Shown here in pieces: positions 4,690 through 49,140 of a stretch of 64,000 nt of DNA. A program made the translations under genes and the position numbers. The stretch's first letter is position 1. Every line of letters begins with the position of its first letter. Below the pieces are notes generated by a model. That model ran no database searches, was not told the origin of the DNA, and saw only the letters and a list, made by a program, of their open reading frames with translations. The DNA is from Macrostomum lignano (taxonomy: Eukaryota), in NCBI GenBank assembly GCA_002269645.1, contig NIVC01000413.1, positions 434,001 to 498,000 on the forward strand. The letters run 5' to 3'.

Positions 4690-4920
4690 GTGTTGCTCAG
4701 ACAACGCTGCTAACTTTGGGTTCGATTCCCATGGGATTCTCGCGCGATTCACAGCCATCAGGGCCAACCCCCAAGACACAGAGAGTACACATTAGAAAGT
4801 CAAAGGGCCGATGTACACCCTGTGTGAGAATTTGTATGGAGTGTGCAAATGGAGTCAGCGGAATGTGCAAGAATTGCCTCAGCGCTGGTTCTTGAGACGA
4901 TGTCGCCAAAGGCGTTGATC
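4690..4920 (+). mobile_element. tRNA-derived SINE-like element, family B
   Basis: B-box GGTTCGATTCC near 4719, then GATTCACAGCCATCAGGGCCAACCCCCAAGACACAGAGAG...TGTACACCCTGTGTGAG, shared with copies at 29310, 42290, 52190 and 55293. Confidence 0.65.
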
Positions 4921-14404: not shown

Positions 14405-21523
<7,119 letters not shown>

Positions 21524-23649
21524 GCTTTATTAGATTTAAACACCGCCTGTGGCACACTAGATATTTAATAATAAGGAAGGCACTAAATTACTGTTGACTA
21601 AACTAACGTTGACAAACTTTTTTTTAATATCGAATTGCGCGCCGCTAGCAACTAAATTGGCGTTTTGGCTGCGCAATATTTTTGAGTAAACTGCAATATC
21701 ACATGTGGCACTGGAATGGGAGAGGCCAATGATTAAAGCATGCAGTAATGTATACAAAAAATAACTAAAATACAAAAAACATTTAGGGATCTCACCTTAT
21801 AAGCTTAAGTTTACTTAATAGTCCATAATTGTCCCCTTGCTTGTCTCTTGTTCTCTCCTATCCCAGGTCCAATTTTTGTACCTTTTTCCCCAAATTCAGC
21901 TTCCTGGTGTCAATGTGAGCAGAATGACATATCATTTGTGTAGATAGGTTACTTGGGCTTCACTTTATGATCTAAAGTTGGCAGGCCCTTTTGTATGCAT
22001 CTAGCATATATAAGGTCTTTTGGCTACAATCTATTTTAGTATTTATAGCCTACCTTATTGACTATTGTCATAGAATTAAAGAAGTATGATAACAACTTAG
22101 AAAAAGTAGACTGATTTAGCTGCTAATATAATTAAAACAGAAGTGACAATTTAGGTTAGAGCCATAATGCAAAAGTCAGCATTTATACTAACCCCCAATT
22201 TCAAATTTAAATTTATAAAAGAAATTTTGAGTGACAAAATGGTCATGTATAAAATGACTAAATATTAGAATGTCTAAAGAATAAAAAAATAAGAAATATC
22301 CAAGTACCAAGGTACTAGACTTTAAAGGTTTGTACTGTAAATTTTGTTTTGATATTGTTACTACTAGCTATAATAATACTTTTTTTACTGAAATAAACCT
22401 GTAAATGATTGTTTGCATATAAATCATAGCATTTTGATAGAAACTAAAAATATAAGAAATGTGTCATATTTATAATTCTAGAACCAAAAATGGCATACCA
22501 CATTGTGATTATCTAGGTATAACTAAAATGCTATAAATAAAATAACCATTTAGACACTACTTTGCTTTAAGTTAAGACTATATACCATCGCTTAGATCTA
22601 AACATTATATTTAATTTATTTTTTCAAATATCAAATATTAAATGGGAGAAAATCTGGTTAAAAATTATTTTGTATAGTGCCAATTAGTCTACTACTTTTA
22701 TCTATAAAAGTACAATATAATTATTTTATTTATCCAAAAATATGAAATATGACATTATTATAAATTTATCACACTTAGATTATTGCACTTGATGAATAAA
22801 AGATTATTGCACTGAATAAGTAAATGATTATTGTACTAGATTAGTAAAGGATTATTGCACTAGCTGAGAAAGTGATTATTGAATCAATTGAGGAAATTGT
22901 TGCATTAGCTACTTGCTATCTAGTAGATGCTTGCTATCTGGGAGATGCTTGCTATTTGGGGGATACTTGCCATCTGGGGGATGCTTGCTATCTGGGGGAT
23001 GCTTCCTTTCTAAGAGATATGCTTGCTATTAGAGGATGCTTGTGGCTTAAGGGATTCTTTCAATTTAGGAGGGATGCTTACTATCTTTGTGAGGACTTTA
23101 TTTTGTTGTATCTTTTTGATACTTTTAGAAGCAAGAGATTTATAGGAAGCATCATTGTCAATGACAATTTTACTCAAATAAGGAAATTCAAAAAAGGAAT
23201 TTCTAACAAAAGATTTTTATATAAGGGGTGTGCAATAAGTTTCTGGATGTGCAAAGTGGAAAATGAGATATACAATTTGGCATAACAAGTGTTACTTATA
23301 ATATATATATATATATATATATTATATACGCTTGTGATTGTATTTCTGCAATTTTAGACAAATTTGCTTGATAATGCCCCTGCAACTTACCATTCATACA
23401 AAAATAGCATATCTCACTAACATAGATAATTTAAAATGGAGCTCAACAGAGGTCATTGCAAAGCAATGATTTAGTATAGCTATAAAAGTGGTTCAAGGTA
23501 GCAAAAGAGCTTTGAGTGACTTTAAGTGGCTTTGAAAGACCTTCTGGGACTATAGTTTTAGAGTGGTTTGGCAAATTTTGATGTGGCCAATGGAGTCTAG
23601 ATGATAAATAGTGCAGCAATGGCCCTATTTCTATAGCAAGCAAAGAGAA

Positions 23650-24700
23650 TATTGCTGCTATTCAGGCATTGTTAGGGGATTATACCAGGGTAATTGTTAT
23701 TTAAATAGAGACAGAAATGGGGATCTTATTGGGAGCCATCTGCATTATCCTACATTTAAGGCTAAACCTAAACAAGATTACTATATACTAGGTGCTTTAT
23801 CATATTAGAAAGGATAAAAGGAGGCTTAGATGGCTTTGTGTCATGCCTCAATAGACTCAATGGTGGTTGCTTAAACTTAATCTAAGAAATTATCAGTGAC
23901 AAATCCTGGATCTATAGTTTTGGCCTAGAGACCAAGTATAAATAGTAGTTGGCCTAGTGGACATTAGTTAGAAGCACTTTACCATTGAAGCTGCAATAAA
24001 AGCATAGTGTGGCATATGCTTGGGCACAACCTAGGGATTTACCCGGCTGTTTCTATTGGCAACACACACATGTAGGTCACTATTAAATGGAATAGTAGTC
24101 AGATGACTACTCTTAGCCAATAGCAACTTACATGTGTGTGTTGCCAATAGAAACGGCCAAGTGATTCCCAAGGTTGTGCATGCATGGTGTGGCAAAGCAG
24201 ATATTGGCCATTTTTAAGACAAAAGCTGGTTATCTAATGACTATGCCACTTGTGCAACAGTGCATAATCACTAGCAATATATTAATTGCAGTAGTGCTAA
24301 ATGCTCTCTCTAATTTCTACCCAAGGACTTGAGCTCAGGGTGTGTGTTTTTATCTTGTATTATAACAATGCCCTTGCCCACAAGTCTAGACAAGTACTTA
24401 GCCAATTCCTGGCTAAAAAACATTTAAAAACTTGGATATCTATCCTATAATATAGACCTGACCTTATGCAATTTCTTTATGTTTTTCTTCAAAAAAGTGA
24501 AAAGATGCATATTGCATTTGTTATTTATTGCCAAATGCTACAATTGAGGCTTTCATTAGGCATGTTGAGGAAATGCCAAGTTTAGAGTAGTAGTAGCTTC
24601 AATGGTTTGAAAGTCAGTTCAAATGGTTGGAAAGGATGCAATAGTACATAGACTTTTTTGGAAAGTATCTTAAAAATGTGATTATTAATTGCTCTCTAAT
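23650..24700 (+). mobile_element. Highly decayed mariner transposase remnant, interrupted by a hairpin element
   Basis: Broken translations resemble mariner motifs: GAICIILHLRLNLNKI, EIISDKSWIYSFGLETK (cf. IITGDETWIYxYDPETK), LYYNNALAHKS (cf. LHHDNAPAH), YRPDL (cf. YSPDL). Many stops and frameshifts. Confidence 0.5.
24024..24179. mobile_element. 156-bp near-perfect palindromic element (MITE-like hairpin)
   Basis: Left arm GCACAACCTAGGGATTTACCCGGCTGTTTCTATTGGCAACACACACATGTAGGT pairs with the right arm; inner AGTAGTC-agat-GACTACT. Confidence 0.7.
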
Positions 24701-25449
24701 CTAATTATTTTAGTTTGCGCATCTAGAAGCTTATTATATATTCCTTATAGAATTTTAAGTTTTACATAAAAGGTTATCATATTTTTTTAATTATCAATGA
24801 CATAATAAATATAATTACATTGACAAAACATTAGATTTATAGGCCTAAGTATATATACTATACCCCATAGTTCAAATCATGGTAGGAATACACTAGAATG
24901 AAAATTTGAATTGTTTTAATTATACAAGTTTAAAAAAATAAAAGTTTGTATATATGCCAACTTTTAAGATGAAAATGGGTTTTGGAGCTAAAACTCTTAA
25001 AAACTCTCAAAAAATTCTCAAATGACACTTTTAGCACAAAAGGCGAAATCCAAAAATTGGGGGCAAGTTTTATGAAAATTTGTTTTTTGGCAATTTGAAA
25101 GCAATAAAGCTATAAAATAAATTTATTTAAGTTTTTGAAAGGTAAAAAAGTTTATAAAAGCACAAATTATTTATGTATAGCTTTATTTTTAATAAAATGA
25201 TTTGTTAAAATGGTAAGTTTAATTATGACCTAAAATGACTCATGAAAATGATAGAAAAGCTATATTAATGTATTTTATTAACTTTAACTATCTTATAATG
25301 TTACACTCTATGATTCTACAACATATTTAACATTATTTTTAAGGGTTTATTTGTTTATCACTTTCATTACTCCTGACAACGTGTATTTTGTAGAGTTTGT
25401 TTGCAATAAATTGTATTCAACGTAAGTTTATTATTTAAACATACAATTT

Positions 25450-25785
25450 CCCATAAGGATCAGAAAATTGCATTTTACTCAGCTTCTACTAAAGCAATTT
25501 GGAAAATTCTTTTTTTTCCTGCATACATGCCACAGTGTAATTTCATTGTTCTTTGTCGCTTAATAAGCATAAAGGAAGCATTTGATTTGGAAGCTGGGTA
25601 ACACATTGGAATTCCTATAAGGATTAGAAAATTGCATTTTACTCAGCTTCTACTAAAGCAATTTGGAAAATTCTTTTTTTCCTGCATACACGCTGCGATG
25701 ATATATGTTTTAGTGTAATTTCATTGTTCTTTGTTGCTTAATAAGCATAAAGGAAGCATTTGATTTGGATGCCGGGTTCACATTT
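25450..25785. repeat. Tandem duplication of ~165 bp
   Basis: ATAAGGAT(C/T)AGAAAATTGCATTTTACTCAGC...GCATTTGATTTGGA occurs twice in tandem. Confidence 0.9.
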
Positions 25786-28512
25786 TGTGGTACCATTTTT
25801 TACCCAAAATTTTTAAGTCTAAATATAGGCATAGGCATATAACAAACACTAATACCATGCAAGTTGATATTTAAATGAAAGAAAACAACTTAAAGATTAT
25901 TCTGCAACAAGGAATTAGTGATATATTTACTTTTAGAGAAAGAAGTTTGTTAGCAAACTTTGCACTTTAAATAAGTATAAATTTTTGCAAGTTTATATAG
26001 TTTTAGAAAAACTTTGAAATCTTTAGAAATACTTCATCTTTTTGAATTGAATAAAAAGTAAAACATAGATTACTTTCTGTTTTGTATATAATAAAAAAAT
26101 TAGCCTTCTCTAAGGCCTACAAGTCTTAAAATTAATTGTTTAATAATGAAAAAAGTGAAACAAAAAATTGCGAATTGGTCAACTCGGACTTTTAAAATGT
26201 TTTTTTATGTTTTTTTCTTATTTATTCAACGATTATAAAGCATGAAAACAAAAGTTTTTATCTAGAACTATTTTTAAAGACCTATCTATCTTTCAAAAAC
26301 CTTTTTTAGATATATTACTTTCTATCAAATGTCCGCAGATTTGTTTTACCATTTTATCCCATGTTTTTGGATTTTGCCAAAATATTGCTTTTTAATTAGC
26401 CTAGGCCTACTTTTTGTTTGAGTAGGTTAATTCATTCATTCAAGTGAACATATTCTAGGAAATCAGAATAACCTTGAACTAAAAAAACAAATCAATTTGG
26501 CATAGCCTACTTGCCCTACTTAGTCCTTTCAAAATCACTTCTAACAATTTTCATGGTACATACTTAAGTAAGTCAAGCTGTAAAAACTTCTTATTAATCT
26601 TGCCCAAATTTTCTTGATTCCTAAAACTTACTCCTGACATGGTTAGGAATCTGAAAAAAACACTCGGGTCCTAACCAAGTCACAACCAGGATCAGAATCC
26701 CAGTTGGGCTCTAGTGTGCACCCAGCATGATCCAGACTATGGTAGCCATTACTTACCCTGGTTTAAGTAAGTGATAGATACCAAGGTTGTCATCAGCAAG
26801 GTAAAAATATGTCAGAATTTTCCAGCATAAAGGCCACCTTCTGGACTATGATAAGCTTATTATTATATGACACTTTTAATTATTAGCTATCATAATATTA
26901 TATATTATTAGTAATATAGCCTATAGGCTACAGATAATAAGAGTAGCAGTAGGCCTAGGCCTAAGCCAAATAAATTTGAAAATGTGATGTGATAACAAAC
27001 AAATTCAGATAAAAAATACACCATTATAAATAAGCAGATAGATTTTTCTAGTCAAGTTATATTTTCTTGCCATGAGGCTACTGAGGCTATGACAATAGTC
27101 AATATTTATAATTTTTATTACTCATGACTCATGAGTTTGACTGACTCGCCGATCCAATATTTTATATTAAGCATTTTATTAGAAACAGGCATAATAAAGA
27201 TACAGGAAATAAATACTTTAAACTTAGTTTTACAAACCAGCAGCAGCAAACAATCACAGCAATAATTTTACATTTTTGCAAAATCGAATATACTGTGTAA
27301 AGTTTTTACTGCTTGCGTCATTTATTTTGTTTTAATACAAAGTCAACTCAAGTCGAATAAACATGATATACTACTGCAAATGAAACGTAAATTGTTCAAA
27401 TATGGCTCACTTTCTATTTTTGTGGTTGTGTCTAATTCTTATTTACATTTTAGGCACCGAAAATCAAACTGGGGCACCGAAAAGCACAGGCGCTGAAAAG
27501 CGTAGACACCTAAATGTACATGTGTAGCTATATAGCTGCAAATAAAATATGACGTCCGTATTCGTCTAGAATTAGAGTTTTTGATTAAAACTTTAGAGTT
27601 ATTTTAAACTGGAAACTTTAATAAAACCAGTGGTCCCTGATTAAAACTTCTGTATGTCGGAAATTCAATTTTAACCACATTGAGTCGGACAAAAATCGTC
27701 GTTTATACCAAGGACGACTAAAGTAACGTATATTAAATGGTCCTTGGTTTATACATGTAGTTGGCTCGTGAACAGGTTCTGTTAAAAAAAGTGCAAAAGC
27801 CAGCCATCGCTATAGATGTTTTTTACTACATGTACACTAGTATGATATTCTGTATTCATGTACATGTATACAAGGAGAAAAAGAAAAAAGAGCAAAGAAG
27901 AGATCTTTTCTAATACTCAACTGCTGAAATTAAAGTAAGTGTCATACATGTAGCTACATGGTACCACATGTACATGTACATGTACTTGTACCTGTAATCT
28001 CCTTTATCTTCAATCACAATGCAGAATACCAGTGCAAGCAGGATTGAATGCAGCTAGCTGCATTGATTGAACCAGTAAATTATTTTACTAAGTATAAACG
28101 GCCTCGACTAGAATTAATAAGACAATCGATTCGATTGGATAAGTATTGAGAATGATAAAATTTCTAACTGTAACACTACTTAAGTTAAAAGTAGATTTAC
28201 TACAGTAAAAAAATACTTACATACTATATGCATGTGCACTGCACATGTGAATATCATTAAAATGCACGTCAATATTCTTGATTTCAGAGTAAAAAAACAA
28301 CAGGAGTAAAAAAGTGACCCAAGTAACAATTCAAAACAGAAAAAGTAGAATGAAATTGAAAAGAATTTTGTTTATTTATAATCAAATAAAAGCTTTTTAA
28401 ACAAATAAAATGCAATGGCCGATAAAATGCGCAAACAAAATTTAAAATAAATAAAGACATGCAGATGGCGATGAATCACAAATAAGATGACAAAGGAGCA
28501 AGAATCTAAAAG

Positions 28513-29145
28513 TTATTTATTTTCGCTTCGATCAGTCACTAAGCTGCTTTGTTGGACTTCTGCACTCTTTCGCTCATCTCTCGATCGATTCAATCGATAC
28601 GAGTAAAGGGTATCGAATCCCAGCGAAACCAAATTGTCAAACGTAACTCTCAGGCGGGTTGGCAGAAAATAAAAGTTAAACACCTGAGCGGCTGTCCAAA
28701 CCGTGGCCTCGTACTTGTAAATTGTGAGACCGGACTCAATTAGATCGTCGCGTACCTCTTCTAGCGTAGACTTGCGCAATAAGCCCAACGCCAGAACGTA
28801 CAACGTGATGTACAATGGCGAGAAAAAGACCGTGTCAAACAGTAGCTTATAAGCCAGAGAGCGGCCCGTTCTACCAACGAAACGCCGGTCCAAGTACAGG
28901 TACCAATAGTGCGACAGCGGGCCCAGCATCAGGCCGCACAAGCTGATGGTGGCCGTGCGACTCCAGCTGTGAGTTCGCCTATCATTATTGGTCGATTCCA
29001 GTCGCTGGCTGATGATGTCGCCGAGGCAGGAGCTGACTCCGCAGATAACGCAGTTGGCGGCTAGGAGGTGACGCGTCAGCAAACGGTTGGCTCTGCGACG
29101 ACTCAGCCGGTAGACGGCTCGGAGACGGCCGAAGCGACGGAACAA
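28513..29145 (-). CDS. MPV17L2: Mpv17/PMP22 family protein, MPV17L2-like; single coding exon beginning at a splice acceptor, start codon not in the exon
   Basis: Family motifs GDIISQRLE, WSRT, GPLSHYWYLYLD, KLLFDTVFFSP, WTAAQVFNFYFLP...RVTFDNLVSLGFDTLYS; Arg-rich N-terminus. The first codon is TTG, preceded by TTTCAG. Confidence 0.88.
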   Translation of the reverse strand: MFRRFGRLRAVYRLSRRRANRLLTRHLLAANCVICGVSSCLGDIISQRLESTNNDRRTHSWSRTATISLCGLMLGPLSHYWYLYLDRRFVGRTGRSLAYKLLFDTVFFSPLYITLYVLALGLLRKSTLEEVRDDLIESGLTIYKYEATVWTAAQVFNFYFLPTRLRVTFDNLVSLGFDTLYSYRLNRSRDERKSAEVQQSSLVTDRSENK

Positions 29146-29309
29146 CTGAAATTGTAGGATTTCGTAGAATGATTAGCTCGAATGCCTTTACAATTGAGAG
29201 CTTAGCGCGGCTTAAAGGCTTAGAGGGTCATCAACTAATCCAGAGATTTCAGGGTGTCTGACCACATATTTTTGGAGTTACGTAACGTAAGAGTTTCTTT
29301 GTTTTCAAG

Positions 29310-29640
29310 AGGCTTGTGCGGGCACCCCGGAGAAACGAGGCCTTTGGCAACGTCGTTTAACAACCAGTGCTGACGTTGACTTCTGAGCACGTACAAGCAG
29401 ACACTGTACACAGGCACGGACTCATACACACGCTCACACAGGGTACAGCGGCCCTGACTATCTAATCGTCCAGCGTGTGCCCTCTCTGTGCCTTGGGGAT
29501 TGGCCCTCACGGCTGTGAATCGCACCACAGCCGCCCGGGTCATTGTTTTTCGAGCACGAGCCCCAAATGAATGTGGCGCTGCGCACGGAATCAAACCAGG
29601 GGTCGTGGCGTGAGAGTCAGAGATGCGTTTACCTGCCACT
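29310..29640 (-). mobile_element. SINE family B copy
   Basis: Minus strand GGTTTGATTCC B-box, then GATTCACAGCCGTGAGGGCCAATCCCCAAGGCACAGAGAG...GTCAGGGCCGCTGTACCCTGTGTGAG; its 3' end matches the 4880-4910 tail. Confidence 0.7.
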
Positions 29641-30324
29641 TTTGTCTAGCCTGTGAAATTTTCTAATAAAATTACAGTAGCTAACGCAAACTGACCCGTA
29701 TATTATTCCGGTTCCAGACTAAGGTTACTTAAAAAACGAATATATAGTTAAAAAAGTATTTTCTAGAACACATTAATATTCATAAAACTTAAGGTCATTT
29801 AAAAAAATGTTTTTAATTTTCAAACATAATTTGACGATAAATCATCGATGTAACATGTTAACAGTAATAACAACAATAATCATAATCGTATGAAAAAGTA
29901 ATACAAATCACAGAAATCAAAACGACATAGTAAATAATTCGGTTAAACTCGACTTAACATAATGAGATGAGATTGAAACCTTCAGCGAATACAGACTAAT
30001 TTAAGCGTAAAATTGAGTAGGAAGTTTATCCAATCAGTTATGCAAGGACTTTATGTGGTTAAATAATAAAAATTGACGAACCCAGTAGACACTATCAGGT
30101 ATCAATAAGTTAATCAAGTGATTTTGTAAAACAAAAACGTTATGGCATGAACTTCTGTGACATACGCCATGTACATGACAAAATTAATATCATCATAAAA
30201 ATGGTGCTATAAGTGCGAAACACAATTAACATAATCTATCGAGTTAATGGCAATAGGTTAGCGCTTTTATCCAATTTTTTGGCTGAGAATTTTCAGATGA
30301 TAAAGGACTTTAAGTATCTCACTC

Positions 30325-30912
30325 AGCATCTTCAGACTAAAGGGCTGCAGTATCTCAGCGTCTTCAGACTGAAGGGCTCCAGTGTCTCAGCATCTTCAGA
30401 CTGAAGAGCTGCAGTGTCTCAACATCTTCAGACTGAAGGGCTGCAGTGTCTCAGCATCTTCAGACTGAAGAGCTGCAGTGTCTCAGCATCTTCAGACTGA
30501 AGAGCTGCAGTGTCTCAACATCTTCAGACTGAAGGGCTGCAGTGTCTCAGCATCTTCAGACTGAAGGGCTGCAGTGTCTCAGTATCTTCAGACTGAAGAG
30601 CTCGTGTCTCAGCATCTTCAGACTGAAGAGCTCCAGTGTCTCAGCATCTTCAGACTAAAGGGCTGCAGTGTCTCAGCATCTTCAGACTGAAGGGCTGCAG
30701 CGTCTCAGCATCTTCAGACTGAAGGGCTGCAGTGTCTCAGTATCTTCAGACTGAAGGGCTGCAGCGTCTCAGCATCTTCAGACTGAAGGGCTGCAGTGTC
30801 TCAGCATCTTCAGACTGAAGAGCTCCAGTGTCTCAGCATCTTCAGACTGAAGAGCTCCAGTGTCTCAACATCTTCAGACTGAAGGGCTCCAGTGTCTCAG
30901 CATCTTCAGATT
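30325..30912. repeat. 32-bp minisatellite just downstream of the VPS8 stop
   Basis: CAGCATCTTCAGACTGAAGGGCTGCAGTGTCT x~18; internal CTTCAG-a-CTGAAG palindrome. Confidence 0.95.
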
Positions 30913-30998
30913 GAGACACTCATCAATTATGATTTAAATAGATTTTCTTAATTTCGATACACACAGATAGTTTACAAGTGTCTGATTGAATCTCAGAG

Positions 30999-49140
<18,142 letters not shown>

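What the first reader, a model, noticed from the sequence alone, without database searches (positions are those of the whole stretch)
28513..29175. MPV17L2-like gene has no start codon of its own: in frame for a spliced-leader-donated AUG
Seen: the ORF's first codon (TTG, 29145) directly follows a strong acceptor TTTCAG. An in-frame TAA lies at 29175-29173 with no ATG in between, and the first in-frame ATG (GLMLGP) would delete the Arg-rich leader and the first hydrophobic helix. Known: flatworm spliced leaders end in AUG, and this AUG can act as initiator Met. Inference: trans-splicing here would give M-LFRRFGRLRAVYRLSRRR, a plausible mitochondrial targeting peptide, so translation would depend strictly on SL addition. 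I found no convincing phase-0 upstream cis exon by eye.
Basis: partly seen in the sequence, partly recalled or inferred. Interest (0 to 1): 0.85.

Follow-up and report, generated by a model that had tools for sequence, protein, structure and literature searches.

The report
Flatworm gene borrowing its start codon
A conserved, expressed mitochondrial-type membrane protein gene (MPV17L2-like) of the flatworm Macrostomum lignano has no usable ATG of its own and almost certainly takes its start codon from the AUG at the end of the trans-spliced leader, a mechanism known in flatworms since 2006, so this is a clean new example rather than a new phenomenon.

Summary
On the minus strand, a 210-codon ORF (29145-28516, stop 28515-28513) opens directly after TTTCAG. 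An in-frame TAA lies 10 codons upstream, and the first in-frame ATG is codon 74.

The window is Macrostomum lignano Mlig_3_7 (NIVC01000413.1). The protein is an Mpv17/PMP22 family member, and its best named relatives are all "mpv17-like protein 2".

- Two diverged gene versions (three assembly copies) share the ATG-less architecture.
- The coding sequence diverges about four times less than its flanks and has no indels.
- Eight of 25 invariant family residues lie upstream of Met74.
- The N-terminus is already full length compared with 104 relatives.
- No upstream ATG exon is shared between the gene versions.
- GenBank annotates all three copies as 5'-partial, one starting exactly at the first base after the AG.
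- The gene is expressed.

The M. lignano spliced leader ends in ATG, and the published trans-acceptor motif [T/C]TNCAG matches this site. SL-donated initiation is therefore the best explanation (about 0.8), but I could not see SL-bearing reads. The mechanism is established (Cheng 2006; Echinococcus ESTs). Novelty is a new member of a known kind, and interest is modest.

The parts
29146..29151 (-). Splice acceptor TTTCAG immediately 5' of the ORF; proposed SL trans-splice site (junction between 29146 and 29145)
   Evidence: Sequence. It matches the published M. lignano trans-acceptor motif [T/C]TNCAG and is identical in all three genome copies.
29173..29175 (-). In-frame TAA 10 codons upstream of the ORF; it closes the frame in any unspliced RNA
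   Evidence: Translation. Conserved in L001 and L002.
28516..29145 (-). Single-exon coding sequence of the MPV17L2-like protein, 210 codons with no initiator ATG (211 aa with the SL Met)
   Evidence: Pfam PF04117 at 1.7e-14. Best named relatives are 'mpv17-like protein 2'. AlphaFold pLDDT is 91.2 with six helices. Divergence from the other gene version is 7/633 with 0 indels, against 4.4-4.7% in the flanks.
28513..28515 (-). Stop codon TAA
29077..29145 (-). Arg-rich N-terminal leader (LFRRFGRLRAVYRLSRRRANRLL), predicted helix 2-25, ahead of the first hydrophobic helix
   Evidence: 10 Arg and 0 Asp/Glu in the first 32 residues; the first acidic residue is at position 44. Helix H2-25 in the model. 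Identical in both gene versions over the first 24 codons.
28927..28929 (-). First in-frame ATG (Met74). Starting here would remove helices 1-2 and cut helix 3.
   Evidence: Eight of 25 invariant family columns (L27...G71) lie upstream of it.
28983..28985 (-). First ATG of the exon in any frame. It is out of frame and opens an 18-codon ORF, so it would act as a decoy for scanning ribosomes if the SL AUG were absent.
28371..28376 (-). AATAAA polyadenylation signal 137 nt after the stop
   Evidence: sequence
29465..29641 (-). 177-nt insertion specific to this copy. It carries the only consensus-donor phase-0 ATG mini-exon candidate (29543-29511 + GTGAGG) and is judged a decoy.
   Evidence: Absent from L001 and L002, whose ORFs are intact.
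30322..30914 (.). 32-bp x 18.6 tandem array in the VPS8 to MPV17L2-like spacer (possible outron or intercistronic region)
   Evidence: Copy number differs between gene versions.
30999..31001 (-). Stop codon of the upstream same-strand VPS8 gene, 1853 nt before the acceptor

Best explanation
This is the functional, single-exon Macrostomum lignano orthologue of MPV17L2, an Mpv17/PMP22-family inner-membrane protein.

Proposed mechanism: its pre-mRNA is SL trans-spliced at the TTTCAG acceptor (junction 29146|29145). The 35-nt leader ...TTATTGCATG is joined in phase 0, and the leader's terminal AUG becomes codon 1, giving M-LFRRFGRLRAVY... (211 aa). Without the leader, the frame is closed by a TAA 10 codons upstream. 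Scanning ribosomes would then first meet an out-of-frame ATG, followed by Met74, which would yield a protein lacking two and a half helices. Synthesis of the full protein therefore depends on trans-splicing.

Shown here: the sequence architecture, its conservation in both gene versions, the family assignment, N-terminal completeness, expression, and 5'-partial RNA-based gene models.

Inferred: that the SL is actually joined at this site, that its AUG is used, and that the Arg-rich leader targets mitochondria.
For: 1. Species and SL. The window equals NIVC01000413.1 of M. lignano. The SL is CGGTCTCTTACTGCGAAGACTCAATTTATTGCATG followed by GTAAG. Between 30% and 39% of genes are trans-spliced, with enrichment for conserved genes.
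2. The acceptor TTTCAG fits [T/C]TNCAG and lies in phase 0.
3. There is no ATG between the upstream TAA and codon 74.
4. Invariant family residues L27, N31, S39, G42, D43, Q47, R63 and G71 precede Met74. Met74 lies inside helix 61-88 of a model with pLDDT 91.
5. The ORF has 30 residues before the conserved Asn, against a median of 27.5 in 104 Met-starting relatives, so only the Met is missing.
6. The two gene versions differ at 7/633 positions in the CDS with 0 indels, against 4.4-4.7% plus many indels in the flanks (Fisher p = 1e-4; pN/pS 0.25). Both lack an ATG.
7. No phase-0 ATG exon candidate is shared. The window's candidate sits in a copy-specific insertion, and the candidate in the other copies is stopped by a TAA here.
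8. All three GenBank/UniProt models are '(partial/Fragment)'. P0006 (Mlig006061.g1) begins at exactly the first exon base. The annotation pipeline sets 5' ends from trimmed SL reads.
9. The gene is expressed, with baseMean about 120.
10. There is precedent: the flatworm SL AUG is used as initiator, and Echinococcus cDNAs require it. For Macrostomum, the final ATG of the SL has been flagged as a start codon.
Against: - No SL-containing read, cDNA or peptide for this gene could be examined. The exact M+ORF protein is not in the 15-billion-protein collection.
- The motif alone cannot tell trans acceptors from cis acceptors, and parasitic flatworms share acceptors between the two modes.
- Two of the three annotated CDSs start 9 and 27 nt inside the exon rather than at the AG.
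- The SL AUG context (T at -3, T at +4) is not a strong Kozak context.
- The amphipathic moment of the leader is no higher than in shuffles.
Confidence: 0.8

Rival explanations
1. A cis-spliced upstream exon supplies the ATG and is joined to the same acceptor in phase 0. It would lie in the 1.85-kb spacer, inside VPS8, or further away, and the annotation simply missed it.
For: One consensus-donor candidate exists in the window (29543-29511 + GTGAGG). The other copies have a weaker one (ATG...GTAACT). The acceptor motif does not distinguish cis from trans.
Against: Neither candidate is shared between the gene versions: one is in a 177-nt copy-specific insertion, and the other is broken by a TAA in the window. 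The N-terminus is already full length relative to homologues. Three independent RNA-guided models, plus a later Mikado model that matches the fragment at 100%, never extend upstream.
Confidence: 0.08
2. Translation starts at a near-cognate codon without any donated AUG. Candidates are TTG 29145, CTG 29106, TTG/CTG/ACG 29082-29074, or ATC 29160, on a trans-spliced or unspliced RNA.
For: Six in-frame near-cognate codons lie between the upstream stop and residue 27. The first codon of the ORF is itself TTG.
Against: Near-cognate initiation is normally inefficient. A consensus acceptor placed exactly at the ORF start in phase 0 would then be an unexplained coincidence (about 2-3%). If the SL is added, its AUG is the first AUG and is in frame, so scanning ribosomes meet it before any of these codons.
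Confidence: 0.04
3. The locus is a decaying or truncated gene. Either it is a retrocopy or pseudogene that lost its ATG, or only the 138-aa product from Met74 is made.
For: The gene is intronless, which is unusual when the species averages about 5 introns per gene. It has no ATG.
Against: Purifying selection is evident: 0 indels, pN/pS of 0.25, and divergence four times below the flanks. The first 24 codons are identical between gene versions. No other M. lignano protein appears among the top 120 hits. The gene is expressed. Met74 lies inside a helix, and starting there would drop 8 invariant residues. There is no SL remnant or poly(A) tract at the borders.
Confidence: 0.04
4. Assembly or annotation artefact: the true start codon is lost through a sequencing error or mis-assembly.
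For: M. lignano assemblies are repeat-rich and redundant.
Against: Three separately assembled contigs give the same junction sequence over more than 100 nt, with the same in-frame TAA.
Confidence: 0.02

Closest known systems
Schistosoma mansoni trans-spliced mRNAs that use the SL 3'-terminal AUG as initiator Met (Cheng, Cohen, Ndegwa & Davis 2006, J Biol Chem 281:733; seen here only through citing papers)
   Same: A flatworm SL ending in AUG is joined in frame to an ORF that lacks its own AUG, so the leader supplies codon 1 of a conserved protein.
   Different: The species is a free-living macrostomorph and the gene is different. Here SL addition and use of the AUG are inferred, not shown experimentally.
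Echinococcus granulosus SL-bearing cDNAs (PMC3510090)
   Same: 143 of 187 SL clusters are full length if the SL ATG is used. In 4 of 8 listed cases the SL AUG is required to match conserved N-termini, which is the same argument made here.
   Different: Those cases rest on sequenced SL-cDNAs. This case rests on genome sequence plus 5'-partial gene models.
slORFs in nematodes, Oikopleura and trypanosomes (slORFfinder, PMC9851317)
   Same: The start codon is created by the SL.
   Different: Those mostly use near-cognate NUG codons inside the leader and often produce alternative ORFs. Here a canonical terminal AUG would initiate the main conserved ORF.
Animal MPV17L2 (Mpv17/PMP22 family, PF04117); the mitochondrial inner-membrane role is from general knowledge
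   Same: There is a Pfam match. Identity to proteins named mpv17-like protein 2 is 34-39%, with similar length and a basic N-terminal segment before the first hydrophobic helix.
   Different: Relatives encode their own Met. This gene is intronless and has no ATG. Localisation is untested.

Membership tests
Flatworm mRNAs initiated at the spliced-leader 3'-terminal AUG | The species has an SL whose last three bases are AUG, followed by a GU donor | tested here: met
   The M. lignano SL is ...TTGCATG followed by GTAAG (PMC8629364). No SL gene lies in the window.
Flatworm mRNAs initiated at the spliced-leader 3'-terminal AUG | A consensus trans-splice acceptor at the 5' edge of the ORF | tested here: met
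   TTTCAG at 29151-29146 matches [T/C]TNCAG and is conserved in all three copies.
Flatworm mRNAs initiated at the spliced-leader 3'-terminal AUG | [quoted passage not shown] | tested here: met
   The junction is in phase 0: ATG|TTG TTC CGT gives MLFR.
Flatworm mRNAs initiated at the spliced-leader 3'-terminal AUG | No genomic in-frame AUG can give the conserved N-terminus | tested here: met
   There is a TAA at -10 codons and the first in-frame ATG is at codon 74. Invariant residues start at residue 27, and the N-terminal length matches homologues.
Flatworm mRNAs initiated at the spliced-leader 3'-terminal AUG | SL-bearing transcripts map to this acceptor | not testable with these tools
   Only indirect support is available. 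The RNA-guided models are 5'-partial, one starts at the first exon base, and the pipeline cuts at SL peaks. The exact M+ORF protein is absent from the collection.
Flatworm mRNAs initiated at the spliced-leader 3'-terminal AUG | Translation actually starts at the SL AUG | not testable with these tools
   This needs N-terminal proteomics, ribosome profiling or reporters.
Mpv17/PMP22 family (PF04117), MPV17L2 subgroup | Pfam domain above the gathering score | tested here: met
   54.1 bits against a cut-off of 27, E = 1.7e-14.
Mpv17/PMP22 family (PF04117), MPV17L2 subgroup | Closest named relatives are MPV17L2 rather than MPV17, PXMP2 or MPV17L | tested here: met
   Every RefSeq- or UniRef-named hit in the top 120 is 'mpv17-like protein 2'. 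UniProt names A0A267GKQ8 'Mpv17-like protein 2 (Fragment)'. No explicit tree against the paralogues was built.
Mpv17/PMP22 family (PF04117), MPV17L2 subgroup | Compact helical membrane fold | tested here: met
   AlphaFold gives pLDDT 91.2, pTM 0.79 and six helices. Hydrophobic segments lie at 23-46 and 98-124.
Mpv17/PMP22 family (PF04117), MPV17L2 subgroup | Mitochondrial localisation or presequence | tested here: inconclusive
   The leader is Arg-rich and free of acidic residues, but its hydrophobic moment equals that of shuffles. No targeting predictor was available.
Downstream gene of an M. lignano operon (Ustyantsev & Berezikov criterion) | A same-strand upstream gene with a repeat-adjusted spacer of 1 kb or less | tested here: inconclusive
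   VPS8 ends 1853 nt upstream on the same strand. Subtracting the 593-nt array and the 177-nt insertion leaves about 1083 nt. One copy is named '.g2' of its transcriptional unit, and there is no AATAAA within 400 nt of the VPS8 stop.

The most novel reading that the evidence does not exclude
SL-AUG-dependent initiation may not be a rarity in this early-branching flatworm lineage. It could be a systematic class of genes, with many of the '5'-partial' proteins in the Mlig_3_7 annotation being complete ORFs whose only missing codon is the SL AUG. Under this reading, production of a mitochondrial inner-membrane factor (MPV17L2) would be obligately coupled to trans-splicing, and the coupling would be maintained in both gene versions after genome duplication.
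Probability: 0.45. Interest if true: 0.4.

Novelty: new member of a known kind. Interest (0 to 1): 0.3.

Why it matters
The finding corrects three database entries (PAA51230.1, PAA86611.1/A0A267GKQ8 and the window's own model). They are labelled partial or fragment but are probably complete apart from a leader-supplied Met.

It also gives a clean test case, in a transgenesis-capable flatworm, for obligate dependence of a conserved protein on the SL AUG. In addition, it suggests a simple rule for re-annotating M. lignano genes: an ORF that opens in phase 0 at an SL site.

It does not reveal a new mechanism.

Tried and rejected
- **Exact look-up of M+ORF.** I looked up both alleles and the Met74 product in the protein and contig collections, hoping for SL-bearing transcript assemblies. 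Nothing was on record.
- **VPS8 C-terminal ORF search.** This was meant to learn whether VPS8 is '.g1' of the same transcriptional unit.
- **Supplement searches for the gene ids.** Three M. lignano papers gave nothing on SL status. A fourth gave expression only.
- **Rfam, tRNA and SL-sequence scans of the window.** There is no SL RNA gene, and no tRNA-derived element could be assigned to the 177-nt insertion.
- **Upstream mini-exon candidate 29543-29511.** Rejected because it is specific to this copy.
- **The 15 repeated 'MLRHWSPS' + GTCTGA candidates.** These lie in the 32-bp array. I rejected them because the donor is poor and the copy number varies.
- **Hydrophobic-moment test of the leader.** It did not exceed shuffles, so the claim of mitochondrial targeting stays compositional.
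- **Cheng et al. 2006.** The paper itself is not held and is cited only through other papers.

Full report
**1. Observation**

I read the minus strand of 27800-30400 and translated 29175-28510.
- The frame opens after TAA (29175-29173) and reads SFYEILQFQ.
- At 29145, directly after TTTCAG (29151-29146), it continues LFRRFGRLRAVYRLSRRRANRLL... for 210 codons to TAA (28515-28513).
- No ATG lies between the upstream TAA and codon 74.
- The first ATG of the exon in any frame is out of frame (28985, an 18-codon ORF). The first in-frame ATG is 28929-28927.

**2. Identity of the sequence and the gene**

- The ORF hits Pfam Mpv17_PMP22 at 54 bits, E = 1.7e-14.
- Its only near-identical relatives are three Macrostomum lignano entries.
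- The locus fetched for one of them is contained in the window, so the window is NIVC01000413.1 of assembly GCA_002269645.1.
- A profile search returned 162 relatives. Every RefSeq- or UniRef-named hit is 'mpv17-like protein 2', and UniProt uses the same name for the M. lignano entry.
- An AlphaFold model built on 68 sequences is confident (pLDDT 91.2, pTM 0.79) and all-helical: H2-25, H27-53, H61-88, H94-123, H128-160 and H163-208.

**3. Is the missing ATG real and is the gene functional?**

- Three contigs carry the gene. L001 and L002 are identical to each other in the CDS, so there are two diverged gene versions (window versus L001/L002).
- All three share the acceptor, the upstream in-frame TAA and the ATG-less ORF.
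- Between the two gene versions the CDS differs at 7 of 633 positions (4 synonymous, 3 non-synonymous) with no indels.
- The flanks differ at 4.4-4.7% and carry many indels. Fisher p = 1e-4 and pN/pS is about 0.25.
- Eight of the 25 invariant family columns (L27 to G71) lie upstream of Met74, and Met74 sits inside helix 61-88.
- The ORF has 30 residues before the invariant Asn, against a median of 27.5 (interquartile range 20-34) in 104 relatives that begin with Met.

The N-terminus is therefore complete except for the initiator, and initiation must occur upstream of residue 27.

- The gene is expressed. A 2026 RNA-seq study lists mikado.scaf3480G5 with baseMean 119.9. It matches the 210-aa fragment at 100% and belongs to a cluster of three copies on the large chromosome.
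- As a control, the neighbouring kinase gene has an ordinary annotated ATG at 21523.

**4. Where can the start codon come from?**

- The M. lignano SL is CGGTCTCTTACTGCGAAGACTCAATTTATTGCATG followed by GTAAG.
- Between 30% and 39% of genes are trans-spliced, with enrichment for conserved genes.
- The top motif at trans-acceptors is [T/C]TNCAG, and TTTCAG fits it.
- Joining the SL at 29146|29145 puts its only ATG in phase 0, giving MLFRRFG...
- The genome annotation pipeline trims the SL, including its ATG, from reads and transcripts and cuts gene models at SL peaks. This explains why all three GenBank proteins are '5'-partial'.
- One of them (P0006, Mlig006061.g1) begins at exactly the first base after the AG. 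The other two begin 9 and 27 nt further in.

This evidence is indirect but derives from RNA data.

**5. Rival: a cis exon**

I enumerated every ATG...GT phase-0 mini-exon in the 1853-nt spacer back to the VPS8 stop.
- Only one has a consensus donor: 29543-29511 followed by GTGAGG. It lies in a 177-nt segment (about 29641-29465) that is absent from the other gene version.
- The best candidate in the other version is interrupted by a TAA in the window.
- The repeated candidates in the 32-bp array have poor GTCTGA donors.

No candidate is shared between the gene versions. Near-cognate initiation (TTG, CTG or ACG codons), pseudogene status and assembly error are each possible but poorly supported; see the rival explanations.

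**6. Context**

- VPS8 lies upstream on the same strand and ends at 30999.
- An MRCK-like kinase begins 7 kb downstream.
- One copy of the gene is named '.g2' of its transcriptional unit.
- The repeat-adjusted spacer is about 1.08 kb, borderline for the published operon criterion of 1 kb or less.

Whether the gene is transcribed polycistronically with VPS8 or from its own promoter remains open. Either way, trans-splicing would be needed.

**7. Comparison with what is known**

- That flatworm SLs end in AUG, and that this AUG can act as initiator Met, has been established since Cheng et al. 2006 (cited).
- In Echinococcus, 143 of 187 SL clusters are full length when the SL ATG is used, and some require it.
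- For Macrostomum, the final ATG of the SL has already been flagged as a start codon.
- I found no paper that describes this gene, or that quantifies SL-AUG use in M. lignano.

This is therefore a new member of a known kind.

**8. Mitochondrial targeting**

The leader has 10 Arg and no acidic residue in its first 32 residues, and it is predicted to be helical. Its amphipathic moment equals that of shuffles, and no targeting predictor was available. I treat targeting as plausible by family and composition, not as shown.

**9. Verdict**

Direct SL-read evidence is still needed.
- The mechanism is already known.
- Interest is about 0.3, mainly as an annotation correction and as a tidy test case in a flatworm where transgenesis is available.

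Noticed in passing
window 30322-30914: A 32-bp x 18.6 tandem array (93% matches) lies between the VPS8 stop and the MPV17L2-like acceptor. It occurs nowhere else in the window. On the gene strand, each unit carries a CTTCAG-T-CTGAAG palindrome, an ATG and an acceptor-like CTTCAG. Copy number differs between gene versions by 30- and 36-nt indels.
   Followed up: partly
window about 29465-29641: A GC-rich 177-nt segment is present only in this gene copy and is absent from L001 and L002. It has weak similarity to window 4744-4842, so it may be a fragment of a dispersed repeat. ARAGORN and Rfam found nothing in it.
   Followed up: partly
L001 5992, L002 6001, L003 10001 (window 29145, 29136, 29118 equivalents): The three GenBank CDS models of the same gene start at +0, +9 and +27 nt from the acceptor, and all are flagged partial. 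The 5' ends of near-identical copies look arbitrarily truncated, probably because of multi-mapping reads.
   Followed up: partly
window 30600-30998: There is no AATAAA or ATTAAA within 400 nt downstream of the VPS8 stop. The MPV17L2-like gene, by contrast, has AATAAA 137 nt after its stop. This is compatible with VPS8 read-through or polycistronic transcription, but it does not prove it.
   Followed up: no
window 44070-44429 and 44768-45529: Two further satellite-like arrays lie near the 5' part of VPS8. The second has a 15-bp unit that gives open frames on both strands (GAKAP, LVLKP, STRGF repeats).
   Followed up: no
window 46347-46946 (+): An ORF carries a Mos1-type transposase HTH_48 domain (E = 4.7e-8). 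It is likely a mariner-family transposon remnant.
   Followed up: no
window 22000-28000: A 6-kb stretch with only 30% GC lies between the MPV17L2-like gene and the MRCK-like kinase start (ATG at 21523, minus strand). The coding parts of the window have 45-58% GC.
   Followed up: no
window 31002-31466 (-): The last VPS8 ORF is low-complexity (Ser/Ala-rich). It found no protein at E <= 1e-5 in the 5.8-billion-cluster database, even though a VPS8 gene is called there. VPS8 is also not among the called genes in the L001 and L002 copies.
   Followed up: no
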